Below, piece by piece: positions 11,995-57,121 of a stretch of DNA of 63,037 nucleotides (position 1 is the first letter of the stretch; the number at the start of each line of letters is the position of its first letter). This DNA comes from Mizuhopecten yessoensis. Its lineage: Eukaryota. Where the stretch lies: NCBI RefSeq assembly GCF_002113885.1, contig NW_018404492.1, positions 2,650,506 to 2,713,542 of the forward strand, read 5' to 3'. The translations under genes were made by a program, and so were the position numbers. The notes beneath the pieces are model-generated. The model did no database searches and was not told where the DNA came from. It was given only the letters and a program-made list of their open reading frames with translations.

Positions 11995-12256
11995 GTAAGA
12001 TCACCAGATAGGCAAACTTAGGTTAGAAAAGCTGTACAACATAGGTAACGTTCCAAAATCTTTAATAACCAGTAATATAATAACAAACATACATTTGTAG
12101 GTCCCTTTAAGGTTTGGTTGTAAAAGACTCGAACAGAGAGTGGACAAAATTTCAGAAAATTGTATAGTTTCCATAGATGATACATTTATTGTGGTGAAAG
12201 AATGAGCAGGAAAGTGGGATTCTTGTGGAATAATGAGTGTTTTCTTATGGTTGCAG

Positions 12257-12429
12257 TGCCCAACTCCCCCATGCTTGGTATCGCGGCTGAGAGATATGGT
12301 CAGATAATCATAGACCACAACGACAACGCTCATGGTATCCTGGAGATCACACCACTGTCAGTGAATACAGAGGAGTCCAAACTAAACCCAGATGTAAACG
12401 TCACTAGGAAGGGTGGAACCTTTGGGGAG
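12257..12429 (+). CDS. ADGRV1: ADGRV1 exon (Calx-beta)
   Basis: gcag|PNSPMLG...NDNAHGIL...RKGGTFGE|gtaaga. Confidence 0.88.
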
Positions 12430-15400
12430 GTAAGAACCCAGATAACAACGTCACTAGGAAGGGGGGAACCTTCAGGGAGGTAAGAACCCAGATAACAACG
12501 TCACTAGGAAGGGTGGAACCTTCGGGGAGGTAAGAACCCAGATGTCAACGTCACTAGGAAGGGGGGAACCTTTGGGGAGGTAAGAACCCAGATAACAACG
12601 TCACTAGGAAGGGGGGAACCTTCGGGGAGGTAAGAACCCAGATAACAACGTCACTAGGAAGGGGGGAACCTTCGGGGAGGTAAGAACCCAGATAACAACG
12701 TCACTAGGAAGGGGGGAACCTTCGGGGAGGTAAGAACCCAGATAACAACGTCACTAGGAAGGGGGGAACCTTCGGGGAGGTAAGAACCCAGATAACAACG
12801 TCACTAGGAAGGGGGGAACCTTCGGGGAGGTAAGAACCCAGATAACAACGTCACTAGGAAGGGGGGAACCTTCGGGGAGGTAAGAACCCAGATAACAACG
12901 TCACTAGGAAGGGGGGAACCTTCGGGGAGGTAAGAACCCAGATAACAACGTCACTAGGAAGGGGGGAACCTTCGGGGAGGTAAGAACCCAGATAACAACG
13001 TCACTAGGAAGGGGGGAACCTTCGGGGAGGTAAGAACCCAGATAACAACGTCACTAGGAAGGGGGGAACCTTCGGGGAGGTAAGAACCCAGATAACAACG
13101 TCACTAGGAAGGGGGGAACCTTCGGGGAGGTAAGAACCCAGATAACAACGTCACTAGGAAGGGGGGAACCTTCGGGGAGGTAAGAACCCAGATAACAACG
13201 TCACTAGGAAGGGGGGAACCTTCGGGGAGGTAAGAACCCAGATAACAACGTCACTAGGAAGGGTGGAACCTTCGGGGAGGTAAGAACCCAGATAACAACG
13301 TCACTAGGAAGGGGGGAACCTTCGGGGAGGTAAGAACCCAGATAACAACGTCACTAGGAAGGGTGGAACCTTCGGGGAGGTAAGAACCCAGATAACAACG
13401 TCACTAGGAAGGGGGGAACCTTCGGGGAGGTAAGAACCCAGATAACAACGTCACTAGGAAGGGTGGAACCTTCGGGGAGGTAAGAACCCAGATAACAACG
13501 TCACTAGGAAGGGGGGAACCTTCGGGGAGGTAAGAACCCAGATAACAACGTCACTAGGAAGGGGGGAACCTTCGGGGAGGTAAGAACCCAGATAACAACG
13601 TCACTAGGAAGGGGGGAACCTTCGGGGAGGTAAGAACCCAGATAACAACGTCACTAGGAAGGGGGGAACCTTCGGGGAGGTAAGAACCCAGATAACAACG
13701 TCACTAGGAAGGGGGGAACCTTCGGGGAGGTAAGAACCCAGATAACAACGTCACTAGGAAGGGGGGAACCTTCGGGGAGGTAAGAACCCAGATAACAACG
13801 TCACTAGGAAGGGGGGAACCTTCGGGGAGGTAAGAACCCAGATAACAACGTCACTAGGAAGGGGGGAACCTTCGGGGAGGTAAGAACCCAGATAACAACG
13901 TCACTAGGAAGGGTGGAACCTTCGGGGAGGTAAGAACCCAGATAACAACGTCACTAGGAAGGGGGGAACCTTCGGGGAGGTAAGAACCCAGATAACAACG
14001 TCACTAGGAAGGGTGGAACCTTCGGGGAGGTAAGAACCCAGATAACAACGTCACTAGGAAGGGGGGAACCTTCGGGGAGGTAAGAACCCAGATAACAACG
14101 TCACTAGGAAGGGTGGAACCTTCGGGGAGGTAAGAACCCAGATAACAACGTCACTAGGAAGGGGGGAACCTTCGGGGAGGTAAGAACCCAGATAACAACG
14201 TCACTAGGAAGGGTGGAACCTTCGGGGAGGTAAGAACCCAGATAACAACGTCACTAGGAAGGGGGGAACCTTCGGGGAGGTAAGAACCCAGATAACAACG
14301 TCACTAGGAAGGGTGGAACCTTCGGGGAGGTAAGAACCCAGATAACAACGTCACTAGGAAGGGGGGAACCTTCGGGGAGGTAAGAACCCAGATAACAACG
14401 TCACTAGGAAGGGTGGAACCTTCGGGGAGGTAAGAACCCAGATAACAACGTCACTAGGAAGGGGGGAACCTTCGGGGAGGTAAGAACCCAGATAACAACG
14501 TCACTAGGAAGGGTGGAACCTTCGGGGAGGTAAGAACCCAGATAACAACGTCACTAGGAAGGGGGGAACCTTCGGGGAGGTAAGAACCCAGATAACAACG
14601 TCACTAGGAAGGGTGGAACCTTCGGGGAGGTAAGAACCCAGATAACAACGTCACTAGGAAGGGGGGAACCTTCGGGGAGGTAAGAACCCAGATAACAACG
14701 TCACTAGGAAGGGTGGAACCTTCGGGGAGGTAAGAACCCAGATAACAACGTCACTAGGAAGGGGGGAACCTTCGGGGAGGTAAGAACCCAGATAACAACG
14801 TCACTAGGAAGGGTGGAACCTTCGGGGAGGTAAGAACCCAGATAACAACGTCACTAGGAAGGGGGGAACCTTCGGGGAGGTAAGAACCCAGATAACAACG
14901 TCACTAGGAAGGGTGGAACCTTCGGGGAGGTAAGAACCCAGATAACAACGTCACTAGGAAGGGGGGAACCTTCGGGGAGGTAAGAACCCAGATAACAACG
15001 TCACTAGGAAGGGTGGAACCTTCGGGGAGGTAAGAACCCAGATAACAACGTCACTAGGAAGGGGGGAACCTTCGGGGAGGTAAGAACCCAGATAACAACG
15101 TCACTAGGAAGGGTGGAACCTTCGGGGAGGTAAGAACCCAGATAACAACGTCACTAGGAAGGGGGGAACCTTCGGGGAGGTAAGAACCCAGATAACAACG
15201 TCACTAGGAAGGGTGGAACCTTCGGGGAGGTAAGAACCCAGATAACAACGTCACTAGGAAGGGGGGAACCTTCGGGGAGGTAAGAACCCAGATAACAACG
15301 TCACTAGGAAGGGTGGAACCTTCGGGGAGGTAAGAACCCAGATAACAACGTCACTAGGAAGGGGGGAACCTTCGGGGAGGTAAGAACCCAGATAACAACG

Positions 15401-17278
15401 TCACTAGGAAGGGTGGAACCTTCGGGGAGGTAAGAACCCAGATAACAACGTCACTAGGAAGGGGGGAACCTTCGGGGAGGTAAGAACCCAGATAACAACG
15501 TCACTAGGAAGGGTGGAACCTTCGGGGAGGTAAGAACCCAGATAACAACGTCACTAGGAAGGGGGGAACCTTCGGGGAGGTAAGAACCCAGATAACAACG
15601 TCACTAGGAAGGGTGGAACCTTCGGGGAGGTAAGAACCCAGATAACAACGTCACTAGGAAGGGGGGAACCTTCGGGGAGGTAAGAACCCAGATAACAACG
15701 TCACTAGGAAGGGTGGAACCTTCGGGGAGGTAAGAACCCAGATAACAACGTCACTAGGAAGGGGGGAACCTTCGGGGAGGTAAGAACCCAGATAACAACG
15801 TCACTAGGAAGGGTGGAACCTTCGGGGAGGTAAGAACCCAGATAACAACGTCACTAGGAAGGGGGGAACCTTCGGGGAGGTAAGAACCCAGATAACAACG
15901 TCACTAGGAAGGGTGGAACCTTCGGGGAGGTAAGAACCCAGATAACAACGTCACTAGGAAGGGGGGAACCTTCGGGGAGGTAAGAACCCAGATAACAACG
16001 TCACTAGGAAGGGTGGAACCTTCGGGGAGGTAAGAACCCAGATAACAACGTCACTAGGAAGGGGGGAACCTTCGGGGAGGTAAGAACCCAGATAACAACG
16101 TCACTAGGAAGGGTGGAACCTTCGGGGAGGTAAGAACCCAGATAACAACGTCACTAGGAAGGGGGGAACCTTCGGGGAGGTAAGAACCCAGATAACAACG
16201 TCACTAGGAAGGGTGGAACCTTCGGGGAGGTAAGAACCCAGATAACAACGTCACTAGGAAGGGGGGAACCTTCGGGGAGGTAAGAACCCAGATAACAACG
16301 TCACTAGGAAGGGTGGAACCTTCGGGGAGGTAAGAACCCAGATAACAACGTCACTAGGAAGGGGGGAACCTTCGGGGAGGTAAGAACCCAGATAACAACG
16401 TCACTAGGAAGGGTGGAACCTTCGGGGAGGTAAGAACCCAGATAACAACGTCACTAGGAAGGGGGGAACCTTCGGGGAGGTAAGAACCCAGATAACAACG
16501 TCACTAGGAAGGGTGGAACCTTCGGGGAGGTAAGAACCCAGATAACAACGTCACTAGGAAGGGGGGAACCTTCGGGGAGGTAAGAACCCAGATAACAACG
16601 TCACTAGGAAGGGGGGAACCTTTGGGGAGGTAAGAACCCAGATGTCAACGTCACTAGGAAGGGTGGAACCTTCGGGGAGGTAAGAACCCAGATAACAACA
16701 TCACTAGGAAGGGGGGAACCTTCGGGGAGGTAAGAACCCAGATAACAACGTCACTAGGAAGGGGGGAACCTTTGGGGAGGTAAGAACCCAGATGTCAACG
16801 TCACTAGGAAGGGGGGAACCTTTGGGGAGGTAAGAACCCAGATGTCAACGTCACTAGGAAGGGGGGAACCTTTGGGGAGGTAAGAACCCAGATGTCAACG
16901 TCACTAGGAAGGGGGGAACCTTTGGGGAGGTAAGAACCCAGATGTCAACGTCACTAGGAAGGGGGGAACCTTTGGGGAGGTAAGAACCCAGATGTCAACG
17001 TCACTAGGAAGGGGGGAACCTTCGGGGAGGTAAGAACCCAGATAACAACGTCACTAGGAAGGGGGGAACCTTCGGGGAGGTAAGAACCCAGATAACAACG
17101 TCACTAGGAAGGGGGGAACCTTTGGGGAGGTAAGAACCCAGATGTCAATGTCACTAGGAAGGGGTGAACCTTTGGGGAGGTAAGAACCCAGATGTCAACG
17201 TCAGTAGGAAGGGGGGAACCTTCGGGGAGGTAAGAACCCAGATGTCAACATCAGTAGGAAGGAGGACCTTTGAGAAGG
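12385..17278 (+). repeat. 50-bp minisatellite (~97 copies) derived from the exon end plus 5' splice site
   Basis: Unit aacccagataacaacgtcactaggaaggggggaaccttcggggaggtaag; GAG|GTAAGA every 50 nt from 12430 to 17230. Confidence 0.95.
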
Positions 17279-17307
17279 TCTCACATTCTGTATTATTGTT
17301 CTTTAAG

Positions 17308-17566
17308 GTATCTGTTAAGTTCCGTGTGGTGAATGGTACAGCTTTAGAACATCTAGACTTTGAGATGTTGTCGGACACTGTTGTTCTCCTGGATGGAATG
17401 AGAAGTAAGGCCCTGCCAATTATTATTCGGGAGGATCAGGTACCGGAGCAGAGGGAGACTTTCTATGTGGAGATTCTGGACCAGATCACAGGAGATGCAG
17501 TCCTTGGCACTAACACCTACAGTGTTGTGAATATCCTGCCCTCTGATGATCCCACAGGTGCATTTG
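17308..17566 (+). CDS. ADGRV1: ADGRV1 exon (Calx-beta)
   Basis: taag|VSVKFRVVNGTA...EDQVPEQRETF...SDDPTGAF|gtaagt. Confidence 0.88.
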
Positions 17567-17996
17567 GTAAGTGGAGTTTACTTCTGTTGATTGAAGTATG
17601 TAACCTTGTTTCATGCATATTCCAATATGAAGAATGCTTGTTTAAGTATCATGAGATTGCAAAAGATTCAAACATTTAACTTGATGGTTTTGAGCCCAGT
17701 TTGCTGGTTGCTGATCTTGAAGTATGTGTAATTGACTGAAGAGTTCCTTGACAACCATGTTAGTAAATAATGTGTCTATAGTTGAAGGCTTTGTGTAGTT
17801 TAGATTTGGTAGCATGACTAGTTAAGGTCAATCACTGATAACTGCAGAAGATTGAATGCCAATCTAGAATTGGCAAAATAATTCTTAGATAATTGCATTT
17901 CTGACTGTTAGTCTAAGCTATTACTCATTTTGTATTAACCTTTTGGGCTCTTAAAACCATTTTTTTAAGTTTTACTAAATTCAATTTGTTCTGCAG

Positions 17997-31995: not shown

Positions 31996-32085
31996 GTACA
32001 TACACTTATTTCATATTTTTACTTTCTTGTGTAATTATCCGCTATAAATGGTTATTATACATTGTATGGTTTATATGTACAGTAT

Positions 32086-32299
32086 TGTCGTGGATTCGGT
32101 GTGTGTTATTCACACACCGTCACAACAAGTAGTTGTAAATGCTCTCGGCTCCTGAAATCAAAGACAAGGTGGAGGAAAATCACTCACGTGTTGTTCGTTC
32201 GGGTTCAAGATGTATAAGAGACCACGCCGAGATGTCACATCCAGGTTGTCGGCGCGGTTACCGGTCTAAGGGAGATAATTCTAACCAAAATTCACCACA
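32086..32299 (-). repeat. 3' LTR
   Basis: Direct repeat of 37839-38052, preceded on the - strand by the PPT. Confidence 0.95.
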
Positions 32300-32313
32300 C
32301 TCTTCCCCGTTTT
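32300..32313 (-). promoter_or_regulatory. Polypurine tract
   Basis: Minus strand aaaacggggaagag immediately before the 3' LTR. Confidence 0.8.
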
Positions 32314-33114
32314 ATGAAGGCCCCCTCTTGGGGTTGGAAGCTGCTGAGCAGGAATCATGAGGTGGTCTTTCTTGAAGTAGCAGATGCTGGAGATGATTGT
32401 TCTTTTGTGGATTTGGACAAGGTCGGGTCACCCCTTAAGCATAGGGGACCCTTAGCAGGAACACAGTTTCACCGTGCCCAGAAGGGGAAGTTCGGGCCCA
32501 TACTTCATAGATCTAATTCTGTTGATGGGCTTAACTTTAAAGTGCCCTCCTCCAAGGTACAGGACCATTAAAGATATAAACTTTGTGGTTGGCATAGGCA
32601 TACTGTGCCCTTGCCAGGTACTCAGACATGTAAACGTATTGGAATATGTCTGATGGTGTCAAAAGTGGAAGAATGCCCTCCACTTGTATACTGACTGTGA
32701 CAGAGAGCTGATAACACAATCCTACCCCTGAGCAGATAACCGCTAAAGGGGCCGATCCCTCACAGTTTCCGGAGACGGTTGAGCAGAAAACCACTTTGTC
32801 TCTAAAGGCCCGGAGGCTGCCTGAGAGGCAGAGAACCGTCTCTTTCTGAACCTCCGTATTGATAGCTGACTTAAATAAAGCTTTTGATTAAAAGCTGTCT
32901 CCCAGCTGAACGATGTGATCCCATTTACCTGGGTCACAAAAATACTAAGGGATTTTTACTGTCCTTGCTCTTATTACTAAACCTAAGAACACAGCAGTGC
33001 CGTGTAATTTATCAACTATGAAAGTATTGCCTAGTCACCCCCACACCAGTCTAGTCAACTTTTGGGGTGCTCTAGTATACCAAGCTGTGCCGGTGAGTAC
33101 CCCACTTGAGTGGG

Positions 33115-36100
33115 TTACAGCGCTATCGCTATCAGATTGCTCCGCGACAGTTGAGCGACCGTGGCCAGGCTTCTGTAATGGCAGCCCCGTCCTTGGTAGG
33201 GTTTCCCGCCATAGCCTCGAACAGTTCCCTGGCCCCTGCGAACGCGTTCTTTCGCATTTGATAAACAGTATTCAACTACCAGCGGCTCAGAAGATACAAC
33301 GATTTCGACATGTATTTTAAGTCTCTTTTTCCAGTTTGATTCCGGTAGACGGGATAAGAAACGGTCATAGTTACCGATTACACCATCATTGACGAAATGG
33401 ATCTGGAGGACACGCACTGTGTTTCCATACTTGTTCTGTTGTCCTCCCTGGGCTAACAAAACCACCGCATGTAACTCCTGGTCGTCCATTTCTCCCTTGA
33501 CATTATCTGATGACGTCACATTTGGTTTGAAACATTTGATGATGGAGGGAACACAAGTTTCCGTTACCTCTTCCCCGTCAAATGGAAATGAGGCAGATTT
33601 TGGTGTTACCGCCTCATCTCCTTCAATTTTGAGCCCCATTGTTTGTGGTACATGTATATGTTTATTTTGTTGAGGACCAGGAGTATGGGCCTTGTATGTC
33701 AGTGGTACCATACTGTCCACGTCCTCCTCAAACCGTTCACAGTTAGCTCCCGCGGGGTGACTGTTCAGTGGCTCTTCCGAGACCATCACTGGCCTCTGGT
33801 TCTCTCTGGGAACTTCATCAATCTCATTATAGACAGGAGCTTCCCTGGGAAGTTGAGGGATGGCCTCTATTGGCTCTGTAACCCTGTTGTCCCCGTAGGT
33901 ACTCTGGCCTTTCCCAGGAACCATGTCTGCTGTATAACAGCTCCGGGCTTCTCTGTGGAGATGGGATATCACTTCTATATGTTCTTTCTCTCCAAATTTC
34001 TGTCCTTCTGTCATTATGACGGACTTGGCAGTGTTATTCATCACTCTCATTATGGGTTGTTGGGTACCGGGAGGCACTACCGAACCGGCAATCATGACTC
34101 CCCCGGGATGTTGTATGGGTCGAATCGTGGCCGTACTCCCATAAGGTCGAGCCCAGTCCACCGGACAGTGTCCTGTAGTGTTTGGCGATATGGTTACATT
34201 TTGGGCCACCTTGACAGTGGACGATGTCCTCTGCTCCTCTAACCTCGGTGTAATAGGTATTGCCTGATTACCAATGAACAGGACGCCCGCATCTAGGTCG
34301 ATGACACAGTTGTTCCGAGACAGGAAATCCACCCCCAGCAACATGTCGTCCATAATGGGGGCCTCACATACGGTCCAGGGTACCTCAGTGTTCCCTATTC
34401 CGATATTTAGGTCTTTTATTTCCCACACTATCTCCACATTGCCAGTAAAACCCCGGAGCCTCACTCGTTTTCCAAGCACCAGTGGTCCCTCAAGCTTGTC
34501 TACCAGCTCCTGCTTAATCAGTGTCATATTTGCTGCTGTATCCACGACAGCTTGAATAGAAGTTCCATTCAAAGTGAGTGGTATGGTGATGCTACTGCCA
34601 TCTGAGACCGCCAGCTTCACCTCCCTCAAAGGTTGGACCTCCTTTCTAGGCGTGGGTGATGGAGACCTTGATCTCTCTGCCTGGTTATTCCGTCCTTTGT
34701 CGTTACCCCAACTTGCGGGACCGTTGCTCCCTCTATATGGTTCCGGGGACGCAGATGGAGATCTTTGACGGTACGCCTGGGTATTCCGTCCTCGGTCGTT
34801 ACCCCAACTGGCGGGGCTGTTGTTGCCTCTCCCTGGTTCCCATGGGCCCCTGCCTGGTTGATTTTGACCTCGGCCTTGTGACCCTGTGCCAGGTGAGTCC
34901 CCCTGATATCTGGGTGACCAGTTACGGTTCCGCGAAGGACCTTGTTCAGCGTATGGTGACCTGTCGCGGGGTCTACCGTCGTACCTATTACGTCCGTTGT
35001 CCTGGGGTGGACGAGGGTACTGGGGCCTATCGCGATAATCTGATGAGGGATAAGGGACCGGTGTCCTATCACGATAATCCGGAGATCGGTTTCCCCCATA
35101 GTTTTGAGGGAACCCTCGGTCGCGTTCCGGAGATCGGTAGTCACCCCAAGGTGGAGGAGAAGACGGACGGGCAGATACGCCGCCCGCACTAAGCCGGGCC
35201 AGGTATTTCTTTAGCTCCTGTAGCTCATCTTTTGAGAACTGTACAGGGGCTTCCTCTACTTTATCATCCCCCGACTTAGTGCCCTCCGCAAACTCTACCT
35301 GCCTACTAGGGTAGTGCGGCGCGCGAGAACCAAACAAAGCACGCTGATTGGCCACGGAGGCCTTTATGTATTTCAGAGCTTTGTGAACCGTCTTGGGATT
35401 CTTCTCCATGGCTCTCTGTGCTGCCATCTTCTCGCGACAGCCTTTGAGGAATGCCTCCGTAGCGATCTGGTTCCTGGTGGTGGTGTCTGCGTGAGCAAAG
35501 CCATCCCCCGTAATGGTTTGAATCCGCTGAGCAAATTCTGCCAAACTCTCACTCTCCTCTTGTCTAGTGAAGTTTAGCTCCCTGCGGGCCACTACTGGAA
35601 CGTCCTTGTCGCTAAACCGTTCCTTCATCTTTTTCTTGAGTTTTGCGAACCCAAGAGTTCGTGGGAGCTTATCTGCGTACTCCAACGCATCACCCACCAG
35701 ACAATCGAAAAACCGTTGTTTGGTCTTACGGTCCGACCATCTACTGTCTTCTATTATCCTGGTGAATTTAAGAGCGAATGGCTCCCAGCGCTCTTTACCC
35801 GAGTAAGTGGGCATCTTATGTCGCTGAGGACTCCTACTCCTTTGACGATGCCTCTGGTAGTCGTCGGAGGAGTCCCCTGAATCTGTATTGCTGTCCCCCT
35901 CTCCCTCACTGGAGAAATCGGGGTCCGATTCGTCGCTCTCTGACGAATCATCACGTCTGCGCCTTGTAGGCGCACGGCGCGTGCCTTGTGGTTGGCGCAC
36001 ATGTCGCTCACCGAGGACGCGATGCGTGCGCCTTGCAGGACGTTCGTTGTCCAACCTGTCGCGGGTCCGTCTATTTCTATTCTCCTCGCGGGTAGCACGC

Positions 36101-37221
36101 GCCGATGTGGTTACGCCACAATTTGTGCTGGTTATGGGCACCCTCGCGTAAGCACCGGCAACGGCCGAAGGCAGACCATGAGCAGGAATAGTATGTTGTT
36201 CTATCTTAACCTGATTTTGCCCTAACTGAGTGTCTATGTGCCCCAACAGGGGATAGTTACTTATCCCGCAATTGGTGTATGGCAGCCTATTGCCTGGGGG
36301 TATGTTACCCCCCCTATGCTGAAAAGCTGGCTGTGAAGGGTCATATCCCCCAGGATAATTCCCCCCTCCCTGCTTGCGAGGCGTCAAACTAGGCTTGACA
36401 TCTTCCAACAGGAAGTCAGCCCCCTTTTCATTGTCTGATGATAGGCATGACAAGGGCAGACTCATTTCCCCTTCAACTTTTGGGGCCGATTCCAGCTTAA
36501 ACCCCCACTTAGAAGCAATGGGTGCAATGGGTGCATTGGCACCTCCAGCTGTCCATGTTGATACATGGGCACCCTGATCTTGACCCCTTACATACCTTCC
36601 ATCCTTCGGGATAGCTTGTAAAATAGGGTCAAACTCTGACTCCTTCTGTTTAGGAATCATTGTCTGCGAGTTCGAGTATGGTGGCACGGAGGTTGAGGTA
36701 GCATGAGTGGTACCCCTATCCCCCCAGGGTGACCAGCTATTTATTTGTGGCCTCTGGCTGACATACTGACCACCACTAGGTGTAGTCAGTAGCATAGTGC
36801 CGGGAGTAGAGCTCTTTTTCGGAGGCGAGGCAGCACGAGCCGCCAGACTCTCTGATTTTCTAAGAGCCTCCGTCTCCAATGTTACCATTAACTCCCTGAA
36901 TTGGACCCGCAGTTCCTTAACTTCCTGCTTTATGTCCATAACCTCGTCCTCCTGTCTGTCTAGCCTATCTGCCCGTGATGAGGTCGACCGGGTTGGTGAT
37001 TGCGCCTCTACAGGGGCAGTGACCATTATGCCCGTGATGACCCCATCACTTAGCCATTTCTGCCACTTCTCAATGCCCACTCTGGAAACAGTCACCAGTT
37101 TCTGCAGAGTGAGCCCCTCATCATCTCTTATACTCAAGATTTTCTGTGCCGTCGCGGGGCCTAAACCCTCCAACGTGCACAGCTCATCTTCTGTAGCTGT
37201 CCGTATATTTATGACAGCCAT
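33115..37221 (-). CDS. HhH-Gag-aspartic protease polyprotein (1368 aa from first ATG), no RT/RNase H/integrase
   Basis: N-terminal INIRTATEDELCTLEGLGPATAQKIL (HhH); capsid region PTYSGKERWEPF...RQEESESLAEFAQRI; protease VVDTAANMTLI...MLLGVDFL; no YxDD or DDE motif seen. Confidence 0.88.
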   Translation of the reverse strand: MAVINIRTATEDELCTLEGLGPATAQKILSIRDDEGLTLQKLVTVSRVGIEKWQKWLSDGVITGIMVTAPVEAQSPTRSTSSRADRLDRQEDEVMDIKQEVKELRVQFRELMVTLETEALRKSESLAARAASPPKKSSTPGTMLLTTPSGGQYVSQRPQINSWSPWGDRGTTHATSTSVPPYSNSQTMIPKQKESEFDPILQAIPKDGRYVRGQDQGAHVSTWTAGGANAPIAPIASKWGFKLESAPKVEGEMSLPLSCLSSDNEKGADFLLEDVKPSLTPRKQGGGNYPGGYDPSQPAFQHRGGNIPPGNRLPYTNCGISNYPLLGHIDTQLGQNQVKIEQHTIPAHGLPSAVAGAYARVPITSTNCGVTTSARATREENRNRRTRDRLDNERPARRTHRVLGERHVRQPQGTRRAPTRRRRDDSSESDESDPDFSSEGEGDSNTDSGDSSDDYQRHRQRSRSPQRHKMPTYSGKERWEPFALKFTRIIEDSRWSDRKTKQRFFDCLVGDALEYADKLPRTLGFAKLKKKMKERFSDKDVPVVARRELNFTRQEESESLAEFAQRIQTITGDGFAHADTTTRNQIATEAFLKGCREKMAAQRAMEKNPKTVHKALKYIKASVANQRALFGSRAPHYPSRQVEFAEGTKSGDDKVEEAPVQFSKDELQELKKYLARLSAGGVSARPSSPPPWGDYRSPERDRGFPQNYGGNRSPDYRDRTPVPYPSSDYRDRPQYPRPPQDNGRNRYDGRPRDRSPYAEQGPSRNRNWSPRYQGDSPGTGSQGRGQNQPGRGPWEPGRGNNSPASWGNDRGRNTQAYRQRSPSASPEPYRGSNGPASWGNDKGRNNQAERSRSPSPTPRKEVQPLREVKLAVSDGSSITIPLTLNGTSIQAVVDTAANMTLIKQELVDKLEGPLVLGKRVRLRGFTGNVEIVWEIKDLNIGIGNTEVPWTVCEAPIMDDMLLGVDFLSRNNCVIDLDAGVLFIGNQAIPITPRLEEQRTSSTVKVAQNVTISPNTTGHCPVDWARPYGSTATIRPIQHPGGVMIAGSVVPPGTQQPIMRVMNNTAKSVIMTEGQKFGEKEHIEVISHLHREARSCYTADMVPGKGQSTYGDNRVTEPIEAIPQLPREAPVYNEIDEVPRENQRPVMVSEEPLNSHPAGANCERFEEDVDSMVPLTYKAHTPGPQQNKHIHVPQTMGLKIEGDEAVTPKSASFPFDGEEVTETCVPSIIKCFKPNVTSSDNVKGEMDDQELHAVVLLAQGGQQNKYGNTVRVLQIHFVNDGVIGNYDRFLSRLPESNWKKRLKIHVEIVVSSEPLVVEYCLSNAKERVRRGQGTVRGYGGKPYQGRGCHYRSLATVAQLSRSNLIAIAL

Positions 37222-37819
37222 GACAAAATATAAAGTTCCAAGAAAGAAATAAGTCAACACACTTAATTAAACAATTACACAATTATGTACAGGGACTTAT
37301 ATCAACAGTGCTATAGTAGACACGTGCCACCGTCCCGTACAAAATTCCAACGATTACAACTACGATTTACAGTTTACAAAATAATTTCTAATTCCTAAAA
37401 TAACTAATTTCTAACCTAATGTAATAATAACCTAACTAAACATATAATAATTTCCTTACAATATAAAAATAATATCCTATACTAACGATAACTCATGTCT
37501 CGCCTGTCATATGTATTCCGCCAATATGGGCGGCCCACTACACAGGCGAATGAAGTTCCGTGAAAACCTAACAAGTAAACTAAATTAAATTAAATATAAA
37601 TTTCAGAACGGCAGTGAAAACACCGCCGACTCTGAATTACCCCTAATAAATAATTAAATAAACAATAATAAACTGCTAGAACTGTCCCAAAATCTCTCAC
37701 TCGTAATTCGCGCACTGGTCAACAAAATGGCCAGCGCACGTGTGAGCGAGAGGGGACCAGCAAGGTAGAAAAAATATATGGAAAAAAATGTCAAAATAGT
37801 GCGAATAGCGTGAGTTCTT

Positions 37820-37836
37820 TCTCACTTATGACACCA
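37820..37836 (-). promoter_or_regulatory. Primer-binding site, tRNA-Leu type
   Basis: Minus strand TGGTGTCATAAGTGAGA, 2 nt after the 5' LTR; close to TGGTGTCAGAAGTGGGA, the complement of the metazoan tRNA-Leu 3' end (2 mismatches). Confidence 0.75.
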
Positions 37837-37838
37837 AT

Positions 37839-38052
37839 TGTCGTGAATTCGGTGTGTGCTATTCACACACCGTCACAACAAGTAGTTGTAAATGCTCTCG
37901 GCTCCTGAAATCAAAGACAAGGTGGAGGAAAATCACTCACGCGTTGTTCGTTCGGGTTCAAGATGTATAAGAGACCACGCCGAGATGTCACATCCAGGTT
38001 GTCGGCGCGGTTACCGGTCTAAGGGAGATAACTCTAACCAAAATTCACCACA
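37839..38052 (-). repeat. 5' LTR
   Basis: Direct repeat of 32086-32299, followed on the - strand by the PBS. Confidence 0.95.
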
Positions 38053-38360
38053 GTATCACAACCACATTGCAAGATTTAAATTGATATAATTTACATATTT
38101 TAATCCAAGAGAAATCAACTGTTTGAATTAATTGGTTTTTAAATATCTCCATTTTAATTACAAAACAGAGAACGTTCACCAACTGTAAGCTATAGATTTT
38201 TTTTCTTACCAGAATGAAATGAAGTGAAAGGATCCATAATTTAGCTATTTCATGATATGTGATTCATTTGATCGCTACTTAGACGATAGCCTGTGTATTT
38301 TTGTCCCCTCCCCTGTCGACTGCCATGTCTTTTTTACACTCGTACTGTTTGGTTACTTAG

Positions 38361-42070: not shown

Positions 42071-42560
42071 GTAACTCATAGCAACCAAGAAATTTGTCAA
42101 ACTATGTATGGAAGGGTAATTGTGATATTAGATTAGAGGTATCGAAGAGAAGTTTGAAAAAAGTTGTTTTCCCATAATATATATACACTTACAGAGAGAT
42201 CCAATTTCTAAATACAGCGAAACTCCACAAATTCCCCCGAAAACAGGATGGTATCCCGTAATAATAAAACCTGGAGCCCTGGAGACTGATAAATGTTTCA
42301 CCGGATAACCCGTACCTCTAAATACAGTTAAAATCAAAGTGTACAGTAAAATAAGTTTATGATGAACCTGATATAAGAACAATTCCTTATATGCATAATT
42401 TATATGTTGTTGTTTTAGAAAAAAAATCCATGCCAGAAAACTGTGTTTATCAGCTGGAATTCTCAATATTTGTAGTACATCATCAAGTTTACGAGAATCC
42501 CCTGAGCAGTTTCCAAAATGGAAAGGTTCCTTTTATGCAATGTCCTATTTGGTGTTGTAG

Positions 42561-42765
42561 AACGGTGACGATGACCTTTGAACCTGGACATCGCCTGTTA
42601 CAGACTTCTGTCGTCATCCTACAGGACACGATTCCGGAGGACACAGAAACATTCTTTGTCTCTCTTACCAACCCATCAGGGGGCGCTGACATTGGCCCAC
42701 AAAACACTATCACCATCAACATTCTCTCCAATGATAATGCTCACGGCATCATCGAGATAGCAGCG
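42561..42765 (+). CDS. ADGRV1: ADGRV1 exon (Calx-beta)
   Basis: TMTFEPG...QDTIPEDTETF...SNDNAHGII. Confidence 0.88.
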
Positions 42766-43149
42766 GTATAATTTTGATTGCTATTTGTTTTTTGAAGAAG
42801 AAATTTGCTATTTAGTTTTTTGAAGAAGAATTTATTTTCAAGTTTAAAAAAAAAAATGTTTATGTTGTAATGACAATATTAACATGTTTGAATCTTGGGG
42901 ATGATAAGAAATTGATATTTGTATTCCAATTTCCAACAATTTGATTTAAGAACACTTGAAGCCTGCAACATTTAAACTCAGGCAGATGCATATGAGTAGC
43001 ATTTATCTTTAAAATTATCAATTGTCCGCATCAAATTTAATGTAGTAGGTTGTATGTGGAAAAGGGGCATTTGGAGAAATATCTTTTGGAAATTCCCATT
43101 GTTAAAAAAAAAGAGGAAAAGACTAATATTGATTGTGTTATTTTCCTAG

Positions 43150-48717: not shown

Positions 48718-49217
48718 GTCTCATGAATAGCTGAGTGATCTGATTTGATACCTTCCTGCATTCCTTAACAGCAGAATTGGAGAAGTGAGGGGTTGGGTTG
48801 TATTTTTCCTCTGTTAAGGAGACATAGAAGAGATTAAAAAATGATTTGCTTATTTGTTTCAGTGCAGTGAATTATTTCTCTTGTCTGTTGCTATATTTCC
48901 ATTGGTAGTTCTGTCCATAGCTGTCATCACATGGCATTGTGTTTCGATGACATAAAGGGAAAAAAATGCTCCATAAATCATCAGAGCATAACAAAATAAA
49001 GAAAAACGACAGTTAAAAAGCCAGTTTTGACCCAATAAACCAAGTAATATTTTATACAGCTTTTATTTTGGAAATGATGTGTTATTTATACAAAGTGGTC
49101 TAGCTAGCTAGCTGATCTAGTCTATAGGGAAGCCACATATAATGTAAAATGTTGTTACAAATAGCTTCAATGAAGAAGAGATACAAATATTCTGTTATAT
49201 TTGAAATTAATTTACAG

Positions 49218-49610
49218 GGACAAAAGACCAGATCGATTGTGCTGAGGACCAAAATGGATTCCGTATTGGAAGGTGAAGAACGGTTCCGCATCTCCCTGGT
49301 AACTGCTGACAACAATGCAGACATCTCGCACAGTGAAGGTGATGCCACTGTGATTATCTCCCCTGATCCTGGAGCTAGTGGTACCATAAGCATTCTACCA
49401 GAGTTTAGAAAAGTGTACATTGGGGAACCAGGGGAATCCAGTCCTAGCTATGATGGCCAGCTTCAGATTGTCATCACCAGAGGGCAGGGTATATTTGGGG
49501 CCATATCAGTCACATGGTCAGTAACACCGCGGGAGACTTCGACCTTTCTACAGTCAGAGGGCACCGTCCAGTTTGCAGACCTGCAGCAGAAAGCTACCAT
49601 TACTCTCCAG
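49218..49610 (+). CDS. ADGRV1: ADGRV1 exon (Calx-beta)
   Basis: GQKTRSIV...DSVLEGEERF...RGQGIFG...ITLQ|gtagga. Confidence 0.88.
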
Positions 49611-49913
49611 GTAGGATGTTCTTCAAATAATTGTAATGTCCATCCGTTCATGTTTTTACTATTAATAACATTTTTTTTTCATTTTGCTTCAATTATGAGA
49701 AAAAATCTCTTTACCATAACTAGAATTTTACAAGTTTGATGTTTTAGTATATATTCTGTAACACTTCATTTGATACTCTGTTGTTCAATGCATTTGCCCA
49801 TATTCTATTGGAGAAGTTGGTCTGTAAACTAGTGAAGGAAACAATGTACCAAAAAGAAGCGTCTCCATCACATAATAATGAAGGGCCTGTATTGTATTTC
49901 TTTACTACTATAG

Positions 49914-51644: not shown

Positions 51645-51876
51645 CTCGACAATGAATTGAAACGTGGATTATAAAGTATAAGATAATAAAAGTGATGTCC
51701 TTAGCAAATGTAGATGACGGAAACATGTTATTTTCGTATATATACATTGCCGATACCTTAGAGTTATATGCCAAAACACAAAATAAATGTCAATTAATGC
51801 TGCAGTACTGTTTGTTCTTTCTGATAGGACAAAATCTTTAGCATGAATTCTATTGAATCTGTTTTCCTTTGCACAG

Positions 51877-52119
51877 TTGTCGAAGAAATCGGCACGGCAA
51901 AGATCCCCCTGGTGAGACTGGGAGGGGACTATGGGAAGCAGACGGTTCTCTTCTCGACACAAAACACCACGGCCCTAGAAGGCATCGACTACAGTGTTCC
52001 GCGGCATGAGGTCATATTTGACCAGGGCCAGACTCGGGCCACCATCAACATTACTGTCCATGATGACTCCGAGATGGAGCATGCAGAGCGCTTCAATATC
52101 ATGCTCAACAGTATTGTGG
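51877..52119 (+). CDS. ADGRV1: ADGRV1 exon (Calx-beta)
   Basis: VEEIGTAKIPLVRLGGDYG...DDSEMEHAERF...|gtaagt. Confidence 0.88.
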
Positions 52120-52139
52120 GTAAGTATCTGCTATACATT

Positions 52140-52840
52140 GGCCTACTTTCAAGGACGCAGAGGTCATACTCGTTAAAAAATTCAAGCGACATTTTCTTAA
52201 GAACCAAACGTTTCAGAGCCATGTTATTTGGGTATGATCTGTAGACCAGCAGTGTAAACCTTTCTTATATATTATGAATAGGTCATAGGTCAAGTTTCAG
52301 TGCTGGCTTGGGTCAAAGGTCAGCATGGATTGTTGTGGGTAAACAGTTTTAAGAATCTTCTGATGAAGTTTAATAATGCTCAGGGTCCTATTATTGGGCC
52401 AGTAGGGACCTGTGATGGAATGGTTCTTCATATTAATGACCTTGACCAAGGTCAAGGTTACAGTTCAAATATATTAAAAAAAGTTATCATATGAATCATA
52501 AGTTCTACAGCCATAATACTCTGATACATTATGTCCTAGGGTTGTAACTTCAAATTGGTTGGGATCCCCATCACATTATCATTTGTATGCTTAGGATTAT
52601 CTCAATACTCCAGGCTTTCTATAGGGAAATGTACTTGGGTCATTACATGGATCGGGATCCCAACCCTATAACCATATAGATGTGTATGCAGATCTCAACC
52701 AGATTTGTTTGGCGCATAATTTGGACAGGAGAGATGGAGTCTGAAAATGTGGAAATATTTACAACACTTTTATTAATGAGGGCATTTTGCCATGATTGCT
52801 TAAATATGCAGGATTGATACAGGCCTTCCGGTCCTCTTGT
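52140..52840 (+). mobile_element. HINE/pearl-like element, 3' part
   Basis: Ends ttttgccatgattgctt...gatacaggccttccggtcctcttgt, like 2930-2990. Confidence 0.55.
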
Positions 52841-53367: not shown

Positions 53368-54200
53368 ATACTGTAAAAGTGTGACACTCTGTTATACTGT
53401 AACAGTGTGACACTTTGTTATACAGTAACAGTGTGACACTCTGTAATACTGTAACAGTGTGACACTCTGTGATACTGTAACAGTGTGACACTCTGTAATA
53501 CTGTTACAGTGTTACACTCTGTAATACTGTAACAGTGTGACACTCTGTAATACTGTTACAGTGTTACACTCTGTAATACTGTAACAGTGTGACACTCTGT
53601 GATACTGTAACAGTGTGACACTCTGTAATACTGTAAAAGTGTGACACTGTAATACTCTAACAGTGTGACACTTTGTAATACTGTAACAGTGTGACAATTT
53701 GTAATACTGTAACAGTGTGACACTCTGTAATACTGTAACAGTGTGATACTGTTATACTGTAACAGTGTGACACTTTGTAAAACTCTAACAGTGTGACACC
53801 CTGTAATACTGTAACAGTGTAACACTCTGTAATACTGTAACAGTGTGACACTCTGTAATACTGTAACAGTGTGACACTGTAATACTCTAACAGTGTGACA
53901 CTTTGTAATACTGTAACAGTGTGACACTCTGTAATACTGTAACAATGTAACACTTTGTAATACTGACAGTGTGACAATTTGTGTAATACTGTAACAGTGT
54001 GACACTCTGTAACAGTGTGATACTGTTATACTGTAACAGTGTGACACTTTGTAAAACTCTAACAGTGTGACACTCTGTAATACTGTAACAGTGTGACACT
54101 CTGTAACAGTGTGATACTGTTATACTGTAACAGTGTGACACTTTGTAATACTGTAACAGTGTGACACTGTAATACTGTAACAGTGTGACACTTTGTAATA
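53368..54200. repeat. ~26-bp minisatellite (~33 copies)
   Basis: Unit gtaatactgtaacagtgtgacactct. Confidence 0.92.
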
Positions 54201-55666: not shown

Positions 55667-57121
55667 CTTCATTCCCAATAGATAATCCAGCCACCATCAT
55701 TCCCAGTAGATAATCCAGCCACCTTCATTCCCAGAAGATTATCCAGCCACCTTCATTTCCAATAGATAATACAGCCATCAGCATTCCCAGTAGATAATCA
55801 AGACACCTCCATTCCCAGTAGATAATCCAGTCACCTTCATTTCCAGTATATAATCCAGCCTCTTTCATTCTCAGTAGATAATCCAGCCACCTTCATTCCC
55901 AGTAGATAATGTATCCACCTTCATTCCCAGTAGATAATCCAGCCACCTTCATTCCCAGTAGATAATCCAGTCCCCCTCATTTCCAGTAGATAATCCAGTC
56001 ACCTTCATTTCAAGTATATAATCCAGCCTCTTTCATTCTCTGTAGATAATCCAGCCACCTTCAATCCCAGTAGATAATGTATCCACCTTCATCCCCAGTA
56101 GATAATCCAGCCACCTTCATTCCCAGAAGATTATCCAGCCACCTTCATTTCCAATAGATAATACAGCCATCAGCATTCCCAGTAGATAATCAAGACACCC
56201 CCATTCCCAGTAGATAATCCAGTCCCCCTCATTTCCAGTAGATAATCCAGTCACCTTCATTTCCAGTATATAATCAAGCCTCTTTCATTCTCACTAGATA
56301 ATCCAGCCACCTTCATTCCCAGAAGATAATCCAGCCACCTTCATTCCCAGAAGATTATCCAGCCACCTTCATTTACAATAGATAATACAGCCATCAGCAT
56401 TCCCAGTAGAAAATCAAGACACCTCCATTCCCAGTAGATAATCCAGTCACATTCATTCCCAGTAGATAATCCAGTCACATTCATTCCCAGTAGATAATCC
56501 AGCCACCTTCATGCCCAAAAGATTATTTTCAGTAGATAATCCAGACACCTTCATTCCCAGTAGATAATGTATCCACCTTCATTCCCAGTAGATAATGTAT
56601 CCACCTTCGTTCCCAGTAGATAATCCAGCCACCCTCATTCCCAGTAGATAATCCAGTCCCCCTCATTTCCAGTAGATAATCCAGTCACCTTCATTCCCAG
56701 TAGATAATCCAGTCACATTCATTCCCAGTAGATACTCCAGCCACCTTCATTCCCAGTAGATAATCCAGTCACCCTCATTTCCAGTAGATAATCCAGTCAC
56801 CTTCATTCCCAGTAGATAATCCAGCCACCTTCATTCCCAAAAGATTATTTTCAGTAGATAATCCAGCCACCTTCATTCCCAAAAGATTATTTTCAGTAGA
56901 TAATCCAGTCACCTTCATTCCCAGTAGATAATCCAGCCACCTTCATTCCCAAAAGATTATTTTCAGTAGATAATACAGCCACATTCATTCCCAGTAGACA
57001 ATCCAGACCCATTTATTATGCAGCCAGCTTCATTTCCTTTAGATAACCCAGCCTTCTTCATTCCCAGTAGATAATACATCCACCTTCATTCCCAGTAGAT
57101 AATCTAACCTCCTTCATTCCC
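55667..57121. repeat. ~28-bp minisatellite (~50 copies)
   Basis: Unit ttcattcccagtagataatccagccacc. Confidence 0.92.

What the first reader, a model, noticed from the sequence alone, without database searches (positions are those of the whole stretch)
32086..38052. Young, complete LTR element with an intact 1,368-aa HhH-Gag-protease ORF but no RT, RNase H or integrase
Seen: 214-bp TG..CA LTRs differing by 4 transitions, GTAT TSD, tRNA-Leu-like PBS, PPT and one stop-free 4.1-kb ORF. No YxDD, RNase H or DDE motif is recognisable, and only ~815 nt lie between stop and PPT. Known: autonomous Ty3/Gypsy elements need Pol; gag-only non-autonomous families (TR-GAG) are described mainly in plants. Inference: the clean TSD and intact ORF suggest it transposed in this form, as a capsid-plus-protease satellite retroelement borrowing Pol from a helper. 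This may be an undescribed animal family.
Basis: partly seen in the sequence, partly recalled or inferred. Interest (0 to 1): 0.85.

Follow-up and report, generated by a model that had tools for sequence, protein, structure and literature searches.

The report
Pol-less scallop LTR retrotransposon family
This is a young, intact copy of a scallop "jumping gene" that encodes its own capsid protein and protease but no copying or pasting enzymes. Several older copies in another scallop genome have the same build, so it must spread by borrowing those enzymes from a relative, a lifestyle known from plants and mice but hardly described in molluscs.

Summary
The element spans 32086-38052 on the minus strand. 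It has 214-bp TG..CA LTRs differing by 4 transitions, a 4-bp target-site duplication, a tRNA-Leu(CAA)-type primer binding site (PBS), a polypurine tract (PPT), and one 1368-aa ORF with HhH, Gag and aspartic protease. Pfam and tblastn find no RT, RNase H or integrase.

It is not a one-off deletion. Six loci of the same family (70-94% nt identity) were recovered from Mizuhopecten yessoensis. None has a pol domain. One fragment carries a short pre-integrase remnant. Two copies, with LTR-pair identities of 93% and 75%, share the contiguous protease-to-tail-to-3'UTR structure, and three copies have their own exact 4-bp duplications.

Gag and protease show purifying selection (dN/dS 0.1-0.35; third-position excess). 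The ~280-aa tail after the protease linker shows none that can be detected. It holds a 16-19-aa vestige of the RNase H-integrase junction, so it is decayed ex-pol sequence.

The parent lineage is autonomous Ty3/gypsy elements with the same N-terminal HhH, D-T-A protease motif, ~215-bp LTR and PBS, for example in Mytilus edulis. The helper was not found.

Verdict: a real, non-autonomous Gag-protease family. It is a new animal member of a known kind (plant TR-GAG and GAG/PROT families, mouse IAP 1-delta-1). Interest is moderate.

The parts
38053..38056 (.). Target-site duplication, 5' side of the element (GTAT on plus, ATAC in element sense)
   Evidence: Read directly; identical to 32082-32085.
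37839..38052 (-). 5' LTR, 214 bp, TGTGG...CGACA
   Evidence: 98.1% identical to the 3' LTR, 4 transitions, no gaps.
37820..37836 (-). Primer binding site, tRNA-Leu(CAA) type, 2 nt after the LTR
   Evidence: The L002 version equals 18 nt of the mouse tRNA-Leu(CAA) probe in PMC7997516. The window copy matches 15 of 17.
37222..37819 (-). 5' untranslated leader
   Evidence: Aligns to L001-L003 at 91-93% identity (p-distance 0.066-0.086).
33115..37221 (-). Single ORF, 1368 aa plus TAA stop: HhH, disordered region, Gag, low-complexity linker, protease, ex-pol tail
37069..37212 (-). N-terminal helix-hairpin-helix domain (ComEA-like), aa 4-51
   Evidence: Pfam HHH E 1.9e-7 and HHH_3 E 1.9e-6. The same domain sits at the N-terminus of 51 of 174 fetched relatives, including full polyproteins.
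35272..35901 (-). Gag capsid-like region, aa 441-650
   Evidence: BLASTP to the gag of polyprotein P0001, E 2e-21. It is the best-matched stretch of nearly all 2440 relatives. dN/dS 0.11-0.27. Third-position excess.
34672..35271 (-). Arg/Pro/Gly/Ser-rich, cysteine-free linker, aa 651-850, where relatives carry a CCHC zinc knuckle. Contains a 96-nt tandem duplication (34658-34840).
   Evidence: composition, 0 Cys, no CCHC; relatives have zf-CCHC.
34297..34587 (-). Retropepsin-type aspartic protease, aa 879-975, active-site motif D-T-A (aa 893-895)
   Evidence: Pfam gag-asp_proteas E 3.9e-11. dN/dS 0.09-0.36. D-T-A is shared with autonomous polyproteins.
33967..34296 (-). Post-protease linker, aa 976-1085. 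Homologous to the protease-RT linker of polyproteins; homology stops where RT should begin.
33118..33966 (-). Tail, aa 1086-1368. No recognisable domain; interpreted as decayed ex-pol sequence still in frame.
   Evidence: No Pfam hit at E<=10. No homologue among proteins of 156-497 aa. AF2 pLDDT 33. No codon periodicity in divergence.
33691..33738 (-). Vestige of the RNase H-integrase junction motif (ERFEEDVDSMVPLTYK, aa 1162-1177)
   Evidence: It is the best tail hit in nine of the eleven distinct relatives compared, always at their RNase H-integrase junction. hhalign E 9e-4 over 19 columns. Conserved in L001 and L008.
32314..33114 (-). 3' untranslated region, 801 nt
   Evidence: No domain in any stop-free piece. 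Aligns to L001 and L008.
32300..32313 (-). Polypurine tract AAAACGGGGAAGAG
   Evidence: conserved in L001, L002.
32086..32299 (-). 3' LTR, 214 bp
32082..32085 (.). Target-site duplication, 3' side of the element
   Evidence: Read directly.

Best explanation
The element is the youngest and only intact copy seen of a non-autonomous LTR retrotransposon family of scallops (Pectinidae).

Origin: the family descends from an autonomous Ty3/gypsy lineage of lophotrochozoans. In that lineage the polyprotein begins with a ComEA-like helix-hairpin-helix domain and the protease reads D-T-A. An ancestor lost RT, RNase H and integrase by internal deletion. What remains is one ORF of HhH, a disordered region, Gag, a basic low-complexity linker that replaces the zinc knuckle, the protease, the protease-RT linker, and about 280 residues of decayed ex-pol sequence.

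Proposed cycle:
- Shown: the LTRs, the tRNA-Leu(CAA) PBS, the PPT and the TG..CA termini are all retained. Several independent insertions of the pol-less form exist, each with a 4-bp duplication.
- Inferred: the LTR-driven genomic RNA is translated into the Gag-protease protein and packaged into particles made of its own Gag and/or the helper's Gag-Pol.
- Inferred: it is reverse-transcribed and integrated by RT/RNase H/integrase supplied in trans by a pol-bearing relative that recognises the same PBS, PPT and LTR ends.
- Shown: purifying selection on Gag and protease indicates these proteins mattered during the family's spread.
- Inferred: the tail is most likely a passenger.

The copy sits antisense in an intron of a multi-Calx-beta host gene.
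For: Anatomy.

No pol.

Family: phmmer found seven 73-92% identical fragments. All come from M. yessoensis, at six loci on different scaffolds. All six are copies of this family, and none has RT, RNase H or an integrase core.

Shared structure: the protease-to-tail-to-3'UTR stretch is contiguous in L001 (one 1741-bp HSP, 91% identity) and in L008 (1655 bp, 79%).

Independent insertions: duplications are ATAC (window), ATTG (L001), CGGC (L002) and GTAG/GTAA (L008). LTR-pair identities are 98, 93, 94, 90 and 75%, so insertions span a long period.

Selection: Gag dN/dS is 0.11-0.27. Protease dN/dS is 0.09-0.36, with bootstrap intervals below 1. Codon-position divergence for L008 Gag is .077/.092/.299 and for L008 protease .119/.111/.311.

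Parent lineage:
- The Mytilus edulis element L006 has 215-bp identical LTRs starting TGTAGTGAAT (here TGTGGTGAAT). Its PBS is TGGTGTCAGA..., and HhH-gag-CCHC-protease is followed by RT-RNase H-integrase.
- L007 has an HhH-gag ORF1 followed by a pol ORF2.
- HhH and D-T-A occur in full polyproteins.

Trace of a pol-bearing close relative: in L004, family sequence is followed in frame order by a pre-integrase remnant that matches 6 polyproteins.

Vestige of pol in the tail.
Against: - No helper was identified. No pol-bearing element with matching LTRs was seen in the window, and none from a pectinid was found among the named relatives.
- Whole scallop genomes could not be searched, so copy number and the existence of an autonomous twin are unknown.
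- All M. yessoensis copies seen are decayed (stops, frameshifts, further deletions). The family may be extinct there.
- The intact ORF of the window copy is compatible with youth alone.
- The window PBS has 2 mismatches to the tRNA-Leu(CAA) 3' end.
- Divergence is very uneven along the element. Against L001, third-position divergence is 0.36 in HhH, 0.13 in Gag, 0.22 in the protease and 0.04 in the tail. This implies recombination, so the selection seen on Gag-protease might have acted partly inside autonomous relatives.
- Constraint on the tail cannot be judged, because its divergence is about what post-insertion decay alone predicts.
Confidence: 0.8

Rival explanations
1. The pol-less 3' module (linker, tail, 3'UTR) is what defines the lineage. 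Its Gag-protease module is repeatedly replaced by recombination with co-packaged RNAs of autonomous relatives. The selection seen on Gag-protease was then exerted in the autonomous elements, and the non-autonomous element does not need its own proteins.
For: Divergence is strongly mosaic. Against L001 the third-position distance is 0.36 (HhH), 0.13 (Gag), 0.22 (protease), 0.04 (tail) and 0.066 (3'UTR). Against L008 it is 0.30 for Gag/protease third positions versus 0.126 for tail and 3'UTR. L004 shows that a pol-bearing relative with 83-88% identical LTR, leader and gag existed.
Against: No autonomous element with a closely related gag was found among 2440 relatives; everything at or above 73% identity is a fragment of the pol-less family. 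Gag first and second positions are barely more diverged than post-insertion decay predicts in every copy. This fits continuous constraint whichever element carried the module.
Confidence: 0.15
2. A single autonomous element that lost pol by a deletion after it inserted at this locus (a one-off dead derivative).
For: A vestige of pol lies in the tail, so a deletion did happen at some time.
Against: The same pol-less internal structure is present at other loci in another genome, in copies with 93% and 75% LTR-pair identity, with their own target-site duplications.
Confidence: 0.03
3. A domesticated host gene derived from gag-protease (in the manner of PEG10, PNMA or SASPase).
For: Long intact ORF. 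Weak Pfam PNMA and Retrotrans_gag matches. Purifying selection on Gag and protease.
Against: It still has near-identical LTRs, a PBS, a PPT and a target-site duplication. It lies antisense in an intron of another gene. Its relatives are multi-copy, non-syntenic and decayed. None of these fits a single-copy, orthologous host gene.
Confidence: 0.02

Closest known systems
Plant TR-GAG elements and the GAG/PROT-only non-autonomous LTR families (e.g. 28 families in sugar beet; PMC13570524); also BARE2 of barley (from my own knowledge)
   Same: Complete LTRs, PBS and PPT; an ORF for Gag (sometimes with protease); no RT, RNase H or integrase. They form families that are thought to be mobilised in trans ('semi-autonomous').
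   Different: The host is an animal (bivalve). At 5.97 kb it is larger than the size range first proposed for TR-GAG. The ORF carries an N-terminal HhH domain, lacks a zinc knuckle, and runs on through about 280 aa of decayed ex-pol sequence.
Mouse IAP 1-delta-1 subtype (PMC6466679)
   Same: An internally deleted LTR element whose deletion leaves one ORF fusing what remains of gag and pol. It is non-autonomous and needs proteins in trans from full-length relatives, yet it is responsible for most new insertions.
   Different: IAP is a class II ERV (betaretrovirus-like), not Ty3/gypsy. Its deletion removes parts of gag and pol but keeps other pol parts. Here Gag and protease are whole, and RT, RNase H and integrase are gone. 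Trans-mobilisation has been shown experimentally for IAP, not here.
Mouse ETn/MusD pair (PMC6466679)
   Same: A non-autonomous LTR family that shares LTR and flanking cis signals with a coding-competent partner, and outnumbers it among new insertions.
   Different: ETn has no coding capacity at all. This family keeps selected Gag and protease.
Autonomous HhH-Gag Ty3/gypsy elements of lophotrochozoans (e.g. Mytilus edulis locus L006, polyproteins P0163/P0165; Logan contig L007)
   Same: N-terminal HhH; Gag 30-52% identical; D-T-A protease; ~215-bp LTR with a similar 5' end; PBS beginning TGGTGTCAGA.
   Different: These carry a CCHC knuckle and a full RT-RNase H-integrase. The scallop family has neither.

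Membership tests
LTR retrotransposon (structural definition) | Two direct long terminal repeats ending TG...CA | tested here: met
   214-bp LTRs, 98.1% identical, TGTGG...CGACA.
LTR retrotransposon (structural definition) | Short target-site duplication flanking the LTRs | tested here: met
   4-bp GTAT at 32082-32085 and 38053-38056. Other copies have ATTG and CGGC.
LTR retrotransposon (structural definition) | tRNA-complementary PBS next to the 5' LTR and a PPT next to the 3' LTR | tested here: met
   PBS at 37820-37836. The L002 version matches 18 of 18 nt of the tRNA-Leu(CAA) probe in PMC7997516. PPT at 32300-32313. No scallop tRNA-Leu gene was available for comparison.
Ty3/gypsy (Metaviridae) autonomous element | Gag and retropepsin homologous to those of Ty3/gypsy polyproteins | tested here: met
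   The best long hits all carry RVT_1, RT_RNaseH and rve in the gypsy order.
Ty3/gypsy (Metaviridae) autonomous element | Pol with RT, RNase H and integrase (in that order) | tested here: not met
   No Pfam hit in the ORF or in downstream pieces. No tblastn hit with full polyproteins except a 16-19-aa junction vestige. The element is a derivative of the lineage, not an autonomous member.
TR-GAG / GAG-PROT non-autonomous LTR retrotransposons | LTR, PBS and PPT retained; ORF for Gag (with or without protease); no polymerase or integrase | tested here: met
TR-GAG / GAG-PROT non-autonomous LTR retrotransposons | Occurs as a family of copies with the same pol-less structure, not a single deletion | tested here: met
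   Window, L001 and L008 share the junction. Six M. yessoensis loci lack RT, RNase H and an integrase core.
TR-GAG / GAG-PROT non-autonomous LTR retrotransposons | Plant host and small size, as originally described | tested here: not met
   The host is a pectinid bivalve. The element is 5,967 bp. The name is therefore used for how it works, not as strict membership.
TR-GAG / GAG-PROT non-autonomous LTR retrotransposons | Mobilised in trans by an autonomous partner | not testable with these tools
   Scallop genomes could not be searched. The only evidence is a remnant of a pol-bearing close relative (L004) and distant autonomous relatives (L006, L007).
LARD / TRIM | No coding capacity | tested here: not met
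   1368-aa ORF with Gag and protease under selection.
Domesticated gag-derived host gene (PEG10/PNMA-like) | Single-copy, syntenic, without LTRs or target-site duplication | tested here: not met
   LTRs and duplication are present. Copies are multiple, non-syntenic and decayed.

The most novel reading that the evidence does not exclude
A long-lived 'satellite' retroelement of animals that has kept its own HhH-Gag and protease under selection while depending on the polymerase and integrase of a helper. It would exchange its protein module with helpers by recombination. It would belong to a so far undescribed Ty3/gypsy lineage whose capsid protein begins with a DNA-binding helix-hairpin-helix domain and whose protease uses D-T-A instead of D-T/S-G.
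Probability: 0.4. Interest if true: 0.5.

Novelty: new member of a known kind. Interest (0 to 1): 0.36.

Why it matters
Surveys of LTR retrotransposons in molluscs classify elements by RT/RNase H (e.g. PMC6238403), so pol-less families are invisible to them. I found no mention of one in the papers searched.

This family shows that the semi-autonomous Gag-retaining strategy, known from plants and from mouse ERVs, also exists in bivalves and lasted long enough there to leave insertions of very different ages. It offers a natural pair for asking two questions. Does a parasite-of-a-parasite need its own capsid? And how is the Gag:Pol balance set in a lineage whose autonomous members, at least in Mytilus, encode everything in one ORF?

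In practical terms, copies are currently annotated as 'uncharacterized' or 'hypothetical' host proteins in M. yessoensis, and the Mytilus relative is annotated as 'interaptin-like'. The HhH-on-Gag feature of the whole lineage may be the more interesting lead.

Tried and rejected
- Exact look-up of the ORF in public assemblies: not on record.
- Word-based search with the whole ORF: only five distant gypsy polyproteins.
- Search with the tail alone (aa 1085-1368): nothing.
- Pfam at E<=10 on the tail and on all stop-free pieces between the stop codon and the PPT: nothing credible.
- AlphaFold2 on aa 976-1368 without an alignment: pLDDT 33, unusable, so no fold search was run.
- Rfam on the window and tRNA scans of the window and all loci: nothing. 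The PBS was therefore compared with a published mouse probe instead.
- I first took ENA contig L005 (1360-aa HhH-Gag-protease ORF) for a second pol-less family. I rejected this: its tail aligns to the pre-RT part of polyproteins and the contig simply ends.
- I suspected that D-T-A instead of D-T-G meant a dead protease. I rejected this: 16 of 25 relatives with a protease, including full autonomous polyproteins, have an alanine at that position (D-T-A in 15, N-T-A in one).
- dN/dS near 1 for the tail looked like proof of no function. I downgraded it: the tail's divergence (5.5% to L001, 12.6% to L008) is about what post-insertion decay alone predicts from the LTR pairs, so the test has no power.
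- Helper hunt through source names of 30 relatives: none from a pectinid apart from the pol-less fragments.
- Species of the window: a lectin exon gave 80-81% identity to Argopecten irradians and Pecten maximus proteins and no M. yessoensis hit. Only one 66-bp shared repeat was found with about 80 kb of M. yessoensis flanks. The host is a pectinid, probably not M. yessoensis, but the species was not determined.
No N run was filled. No contig looked human.


Full report
OBSERVATION

The element is real and its borders are exactly those given, but it reads on the minus strand. The repeat finder gives a single long direct repeat pair, 32084-32299 and 37837-38052, at 98% identity. Aligned, the LTRs proper are 214 bp (TGTGG...CGACA) and differ at four positions, all transitions.

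Reading the junctions gives four features:
- A 4-bp duplication, ATAC in element sense (GTAT on the plus strand), at 38053-38056 and 32082-32085.
- A PBS, TGGTGTCATAAGTGAGA, two bases after the 5' LTR.
- A polypurine tract, AAAACGGGGAAGAG, abutting the 3' LTR.
- A 1368-aa ORF from the ATG at 37221 to the TAA at 33115-33117.

No other stop-free stretch in the window exceeds 252 codons.

The PBS of a sister copy (L002) is TGGTGTCAGAAGTGGGAT. These 18 nt are identical to the first 18 nt of a published antisense probe for mouse tRNA-Leu(CAA) (PMC7997516). The window copy has two mismatches to it.

CODING CONTENT

Pfam finds the following:
- An N-terminal helix-hairpin-helix domain at aa 4-51.
- A gag-type aspartic protease at aa 879-975 (E 4e-11).
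- Sub-threshold Retrotrans_gag and PNMA matches at aa 472-595.

Gag identity is secured by homology: aa 438-631 align to the gag region of a 1958-aa gypsy polyprotein (E 2e-21). A full phmmer search of aa 1-1200 finds 2440 relatives whose best stretch is nearly always aa ~400-650.

No RT, RNase H or integrase is found by three tests:
- Pfam in the ORF.
- Pfam at E<=10 in every stop-free piece between the stop and the PPT, or in aa 976-1368 taken alone.
- tblastn of five polyproteins against the whole window.

Homology to polyproteins runs through the protease and its downstream linker to aa ~1085, and stops exactly where RT begins in the relatives.

The one exception is a short in-frame motif, ERFEEDVDSMVPLTYK (aa 1162-1177, window 33691-33738). 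For nine of the eleven distinct relatives compared it is the best tail match, and it always maps to their conserved motif between RNase H and the integrase zinc-binding domain. A profile of that region gives hhalign E 9e-4 over 19 columns. I read it as a vestige: the tail is what is left of pol after deletion and decay.

Between Gag and protease, where relatives have a CCHC knuckle, this ORF has a cysteine-free Arg/Pro/Gly/Ser-rich stretch with an internal 96-nt duplication.

IS IT A FAMILY OR A ONE-OFF?

This was the crux, and the evidence favours a family.

The closest phmmer hits are seven short proteins, 73-92% identical. All are annotated as hypothetical or uncharacterized proteins of the Yesso scallop, Mizuhopecten yessoensis. 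Fetching their loci gave six places on six scaffolds of GCA_002113885.2. BLASTN and tblastn against the window element show that all six are copies of the same family at 70-94% nt identity. None contains RT, RNase H or an integrase core.

| Locus | Structure | LTR-pair identity | Duplication |
|---|---|---|---|
| L001 | Keeps protease, linker, vestige, tail and 3'UTR in one contiguous 1741-bp alignment (91%) | 93% | ATTG |
| L008 | Divergent copy; same contiguity over 1655 bp (79%) | 75% (13% substitutions) | GTAG/GTAA, 3 of 4 |
| L002 | Shorter; lacks everything from just after the protease to near the 3' LTR | 94% | CGGC |
| L003 | Shorter; same loss as L002 | 90% | not read (5' LTR end truncated) |
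| L004 | Fragment | none (no 3' LTR) | none |
| L009 | Fragment | none (no LTR) | none |

The pol-less architecture is therefore older than insertions whose LTRs have diverged by 7-13%. It has inserted repeatedly, and the window copy (1.9% LTR divergence) is its most recent known product. All M. yessoensis copies have stops, frameshifts or extra deletions. The window copy is the only intact one seen.

SELECTION

Pairwise Nei-Gojobori estimates between the window ORF and each copy give the following:
- dN/dS of 0.11-0.27 for Gag.
- dN/dS of 0.09-0.36 for the protease core.
- dN/dS of 0.4-0.6 for the disordered N-terminal region.

Bootstrap intervals for Gag and protease lie below 1.

A nucleotide-alignment version that avoids tblastn ascertainment shows the classic third-position excess in Gag and protease:
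- L008 Gag: .077/.092/.299.
- L008 protease: .119/.111/.311.
- L009 Gag: .105/.090/.306.

For the post-protease linker and the tail there is no periodicity (L001 tail .064/.057/.043; L008 .099/.170/.110). The distance equals that of the 3'UTR.

That does not prove the tail is functionless. Its total divergence (5.5% and 12.6%) is about what the LTR pairs predict for neutral decay since insertion, so the comparison has no power there. A single-sequence AlphaFold model of aa 976-1368 was unusable (pLDDT 33), and the tail has no homologue among proteins of comparable size.

My reading is that the tail is a passenger kept open mainly by youth and descent from a reading frame. A weak preference for not truncating the ORF cannot be excluded.

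MOSAICISM

Divergence is very uneven along the element. Against L001 the third-position distance is 0.36 in the HhH segment, 0.13 in Gag, 0.22 in protease and 0.04 in the tail. Against L002 and L003 the HhH segment differs by only 0.08.

This is the pattern expected from template switching between co-packaged RNAs of different subfamilies. It opens the main rival: that the Gag-protease module is periodically re-acquired from autonomous relatives, so part of the selection signal was earned there.

PARENT LINEAGE AND HELPER

The HhH-Gag architecture is not peculiar to this element.
- Pfam finds HHH_3 at the N-terminus of several relatives.
- BLASTP finds an HhH-like start within the first ~10 residues of 51 of 174 fetched relatives. 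These include 1943-aa Mytilus edulis and 2211-aa metagenomic polyproteins.
- Of the 25 relatives with a protease, 15 read D-T-A and one N-T-A at the active-site motif, again including full polyproteins. The motif is a lineage trait, not a defect.

Two autonomous elements of the lineage were recovered:
- The Mytilus edulis locus L006 is complete. It has 215-bp LTRs that are 100% identical and start TGTAGTGAAT (here TGTGGTGAAT). Its PBS begins TGGTGTCAGA. HhH-gag-CCHC-protease is followed by RT-RNase H-integrase.
- Logan contig L007 has HhH-gag as ORF1 and pol as ORF2.

These show what the helper should look like. A scallop helper was not found. Nothing pol-like lies in the window, and none of the 30 relatives whose source names I could read is from a pectinid, apart from the pol-less fragments.

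The nearest thing to a trace is L004. There, family sequence (LTR, leader and gag at 83-88% identity, then a bit of post-protease linker) is followed 15 nt later by a stretch matching the pre-integrase region of six polyproteins. The match is in the same orientation and order, at E 1e-4 to 1e-2. It has no nucleotide similarity to the window's tail, and Pfam sees nothing in it. It suggests that a pol-bearing close relative existed in M. yessoensis.

CONTEXT

The host is a pectinid.
- A lectin exon at 5894-6622 (minus) is 80-81% identical to Argopecten irradians and Pecten maximus proteins.
- The lack of any M. yessoensis hit, and of shared repeats with about 80 kb of M. yessoensis flanks, suggests a different species. 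This is not settled.
- Calx-beta exons lie on the plus strand at 17158-17676, 42355-42768 and 51828-52241, so the element sits antisense in an intron.

COMPARISON WITH WHAT IS KNOWN

By structure and inferred lifestyle this element works like two known kinds:
- Plant TR-GAG elements and the GAG/PROT-only non-autonomous families (28 such families in sugar beet; 'semi-autonomous'; PMC13570524).
- The mouse IAP 1-delta-1 subtype. There an internal deletion leaves a fused gag-pol ORF, retrotransposition needs proteins in trans, and the deleted form causes most new insertions (PMC6466679). ETn/MusD is a further animal precedent for the partner principle.

Strict TR-GAG membership fails on host and size.

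I found no paper describing such a family in molluscs or a gypsy lineage with HhH on Gag. The mollusc survey I looked at does not mention non-autonomous elements. Absence from the held library is not proof of novelty.

VERDICT

It is a new (animal, bivalve) member of a known kind rather than a new kind, so interest is moderate.

Shown:
- The anatomy.
- The absence of pol.
- Family membership, with a shared pol-less structure at independent, differently aged insertion sites.
- Selection on Gag and protease.
- Derivation from an HhH-Gag gypsy lineage.

Inferred:
- Trans-mobilisation by a helper.
- The role of its own Gag and protease in that process.
- Passenger status of the tail.
- Recombination with relatives.

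Noticed in passing
window 12385-17262: A 4.9-kb satellite of 97.6 copies of a 50-bp unit (97% matches). It is GC-rich with strong A-over-T and G-over-C skew, and it runs straight into a stop-free piece that contains a Calx-beta exon (17158-17676).
   Followed up: no
window 17158-17676, 42355-42768, 51828-52241 (plus strand); possibly 49143-49736: Exons with Calx-beta domains belonging to a large plus-strand host gene. The retroelement lies antisense in one of its introns.
   Followed up: partly
window 5894-6622 (minus strand): First exon of a secreted C-type lectin (signal peptide, coiled segment, start of the Lectin_C domain). It is 80-81% identical to 'snaclec 7-like' of Argopecten irradians and 'perlucin-like' of Pecten maximus, which places the window in Pectinidae.
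   Followed up: partly
L006 (Mytilus edulis OY782956.1) 6601-17021: A 10.4-kb autonomous HhH-Gag gypsy element with 100% identical 215-bp LTRs, so probably very recent. About 2.8 kb of uncharacterised sequence lies between the integrase and the 3' LTR. Its gag-protease part is annotated in RefSeq as 'interaptin-like'. The flanks read ATAG / ATAT, so they are not a clean 4-bp duplication.
   Followed up: partly
Relatives P0009, P0012, P0019, P0020, P0045, P0079, P0163 and others: A whole Ty3/gypsy lineage (Mytilus, plus many metagenome and Logan contigs of unnamed source) whose Gag starts with a ComEA-like helix-hairpin-helix domain and whose protease mostly reads D-T-A. One member is annotated by JGI as a 'competence ComEA-like helix-hairpin-helix protein'. 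I found no description of this lineage in the papers searched.
   Followed up: partly
window 34658-34840 (minus-strand ORF aa ~795-855): A 96-nt tandem duplication (78% identical) inside the Arg/Gly/Ser/Pro-rich linker, giving two 32-aa repeats (…SWGND(R/K)GRN…). L001 lacks this whole stretch (element-sense positions 2963-3432).
   Followed up: no
L001 8134-8993: The 5' LTR of this M. yessoensis copy is split by an insertion of about 860 bp of unrelated sequence, and its 3' LTR has an internal deletion of about 90 bp.
   Followed up: no
window 53368-54200, 55667-57125, 62790-63037 and others: The window is dense in minisatellites: 26-bp x 32 copies, 28-bp x 30 plus 11 copies, and a 21-bp array at the right edge that reads as a Thr/Ser/Pro-rich (mucin-like) repeat on the minus strand. 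About 40 TRF rows in all.
   Followed up: no
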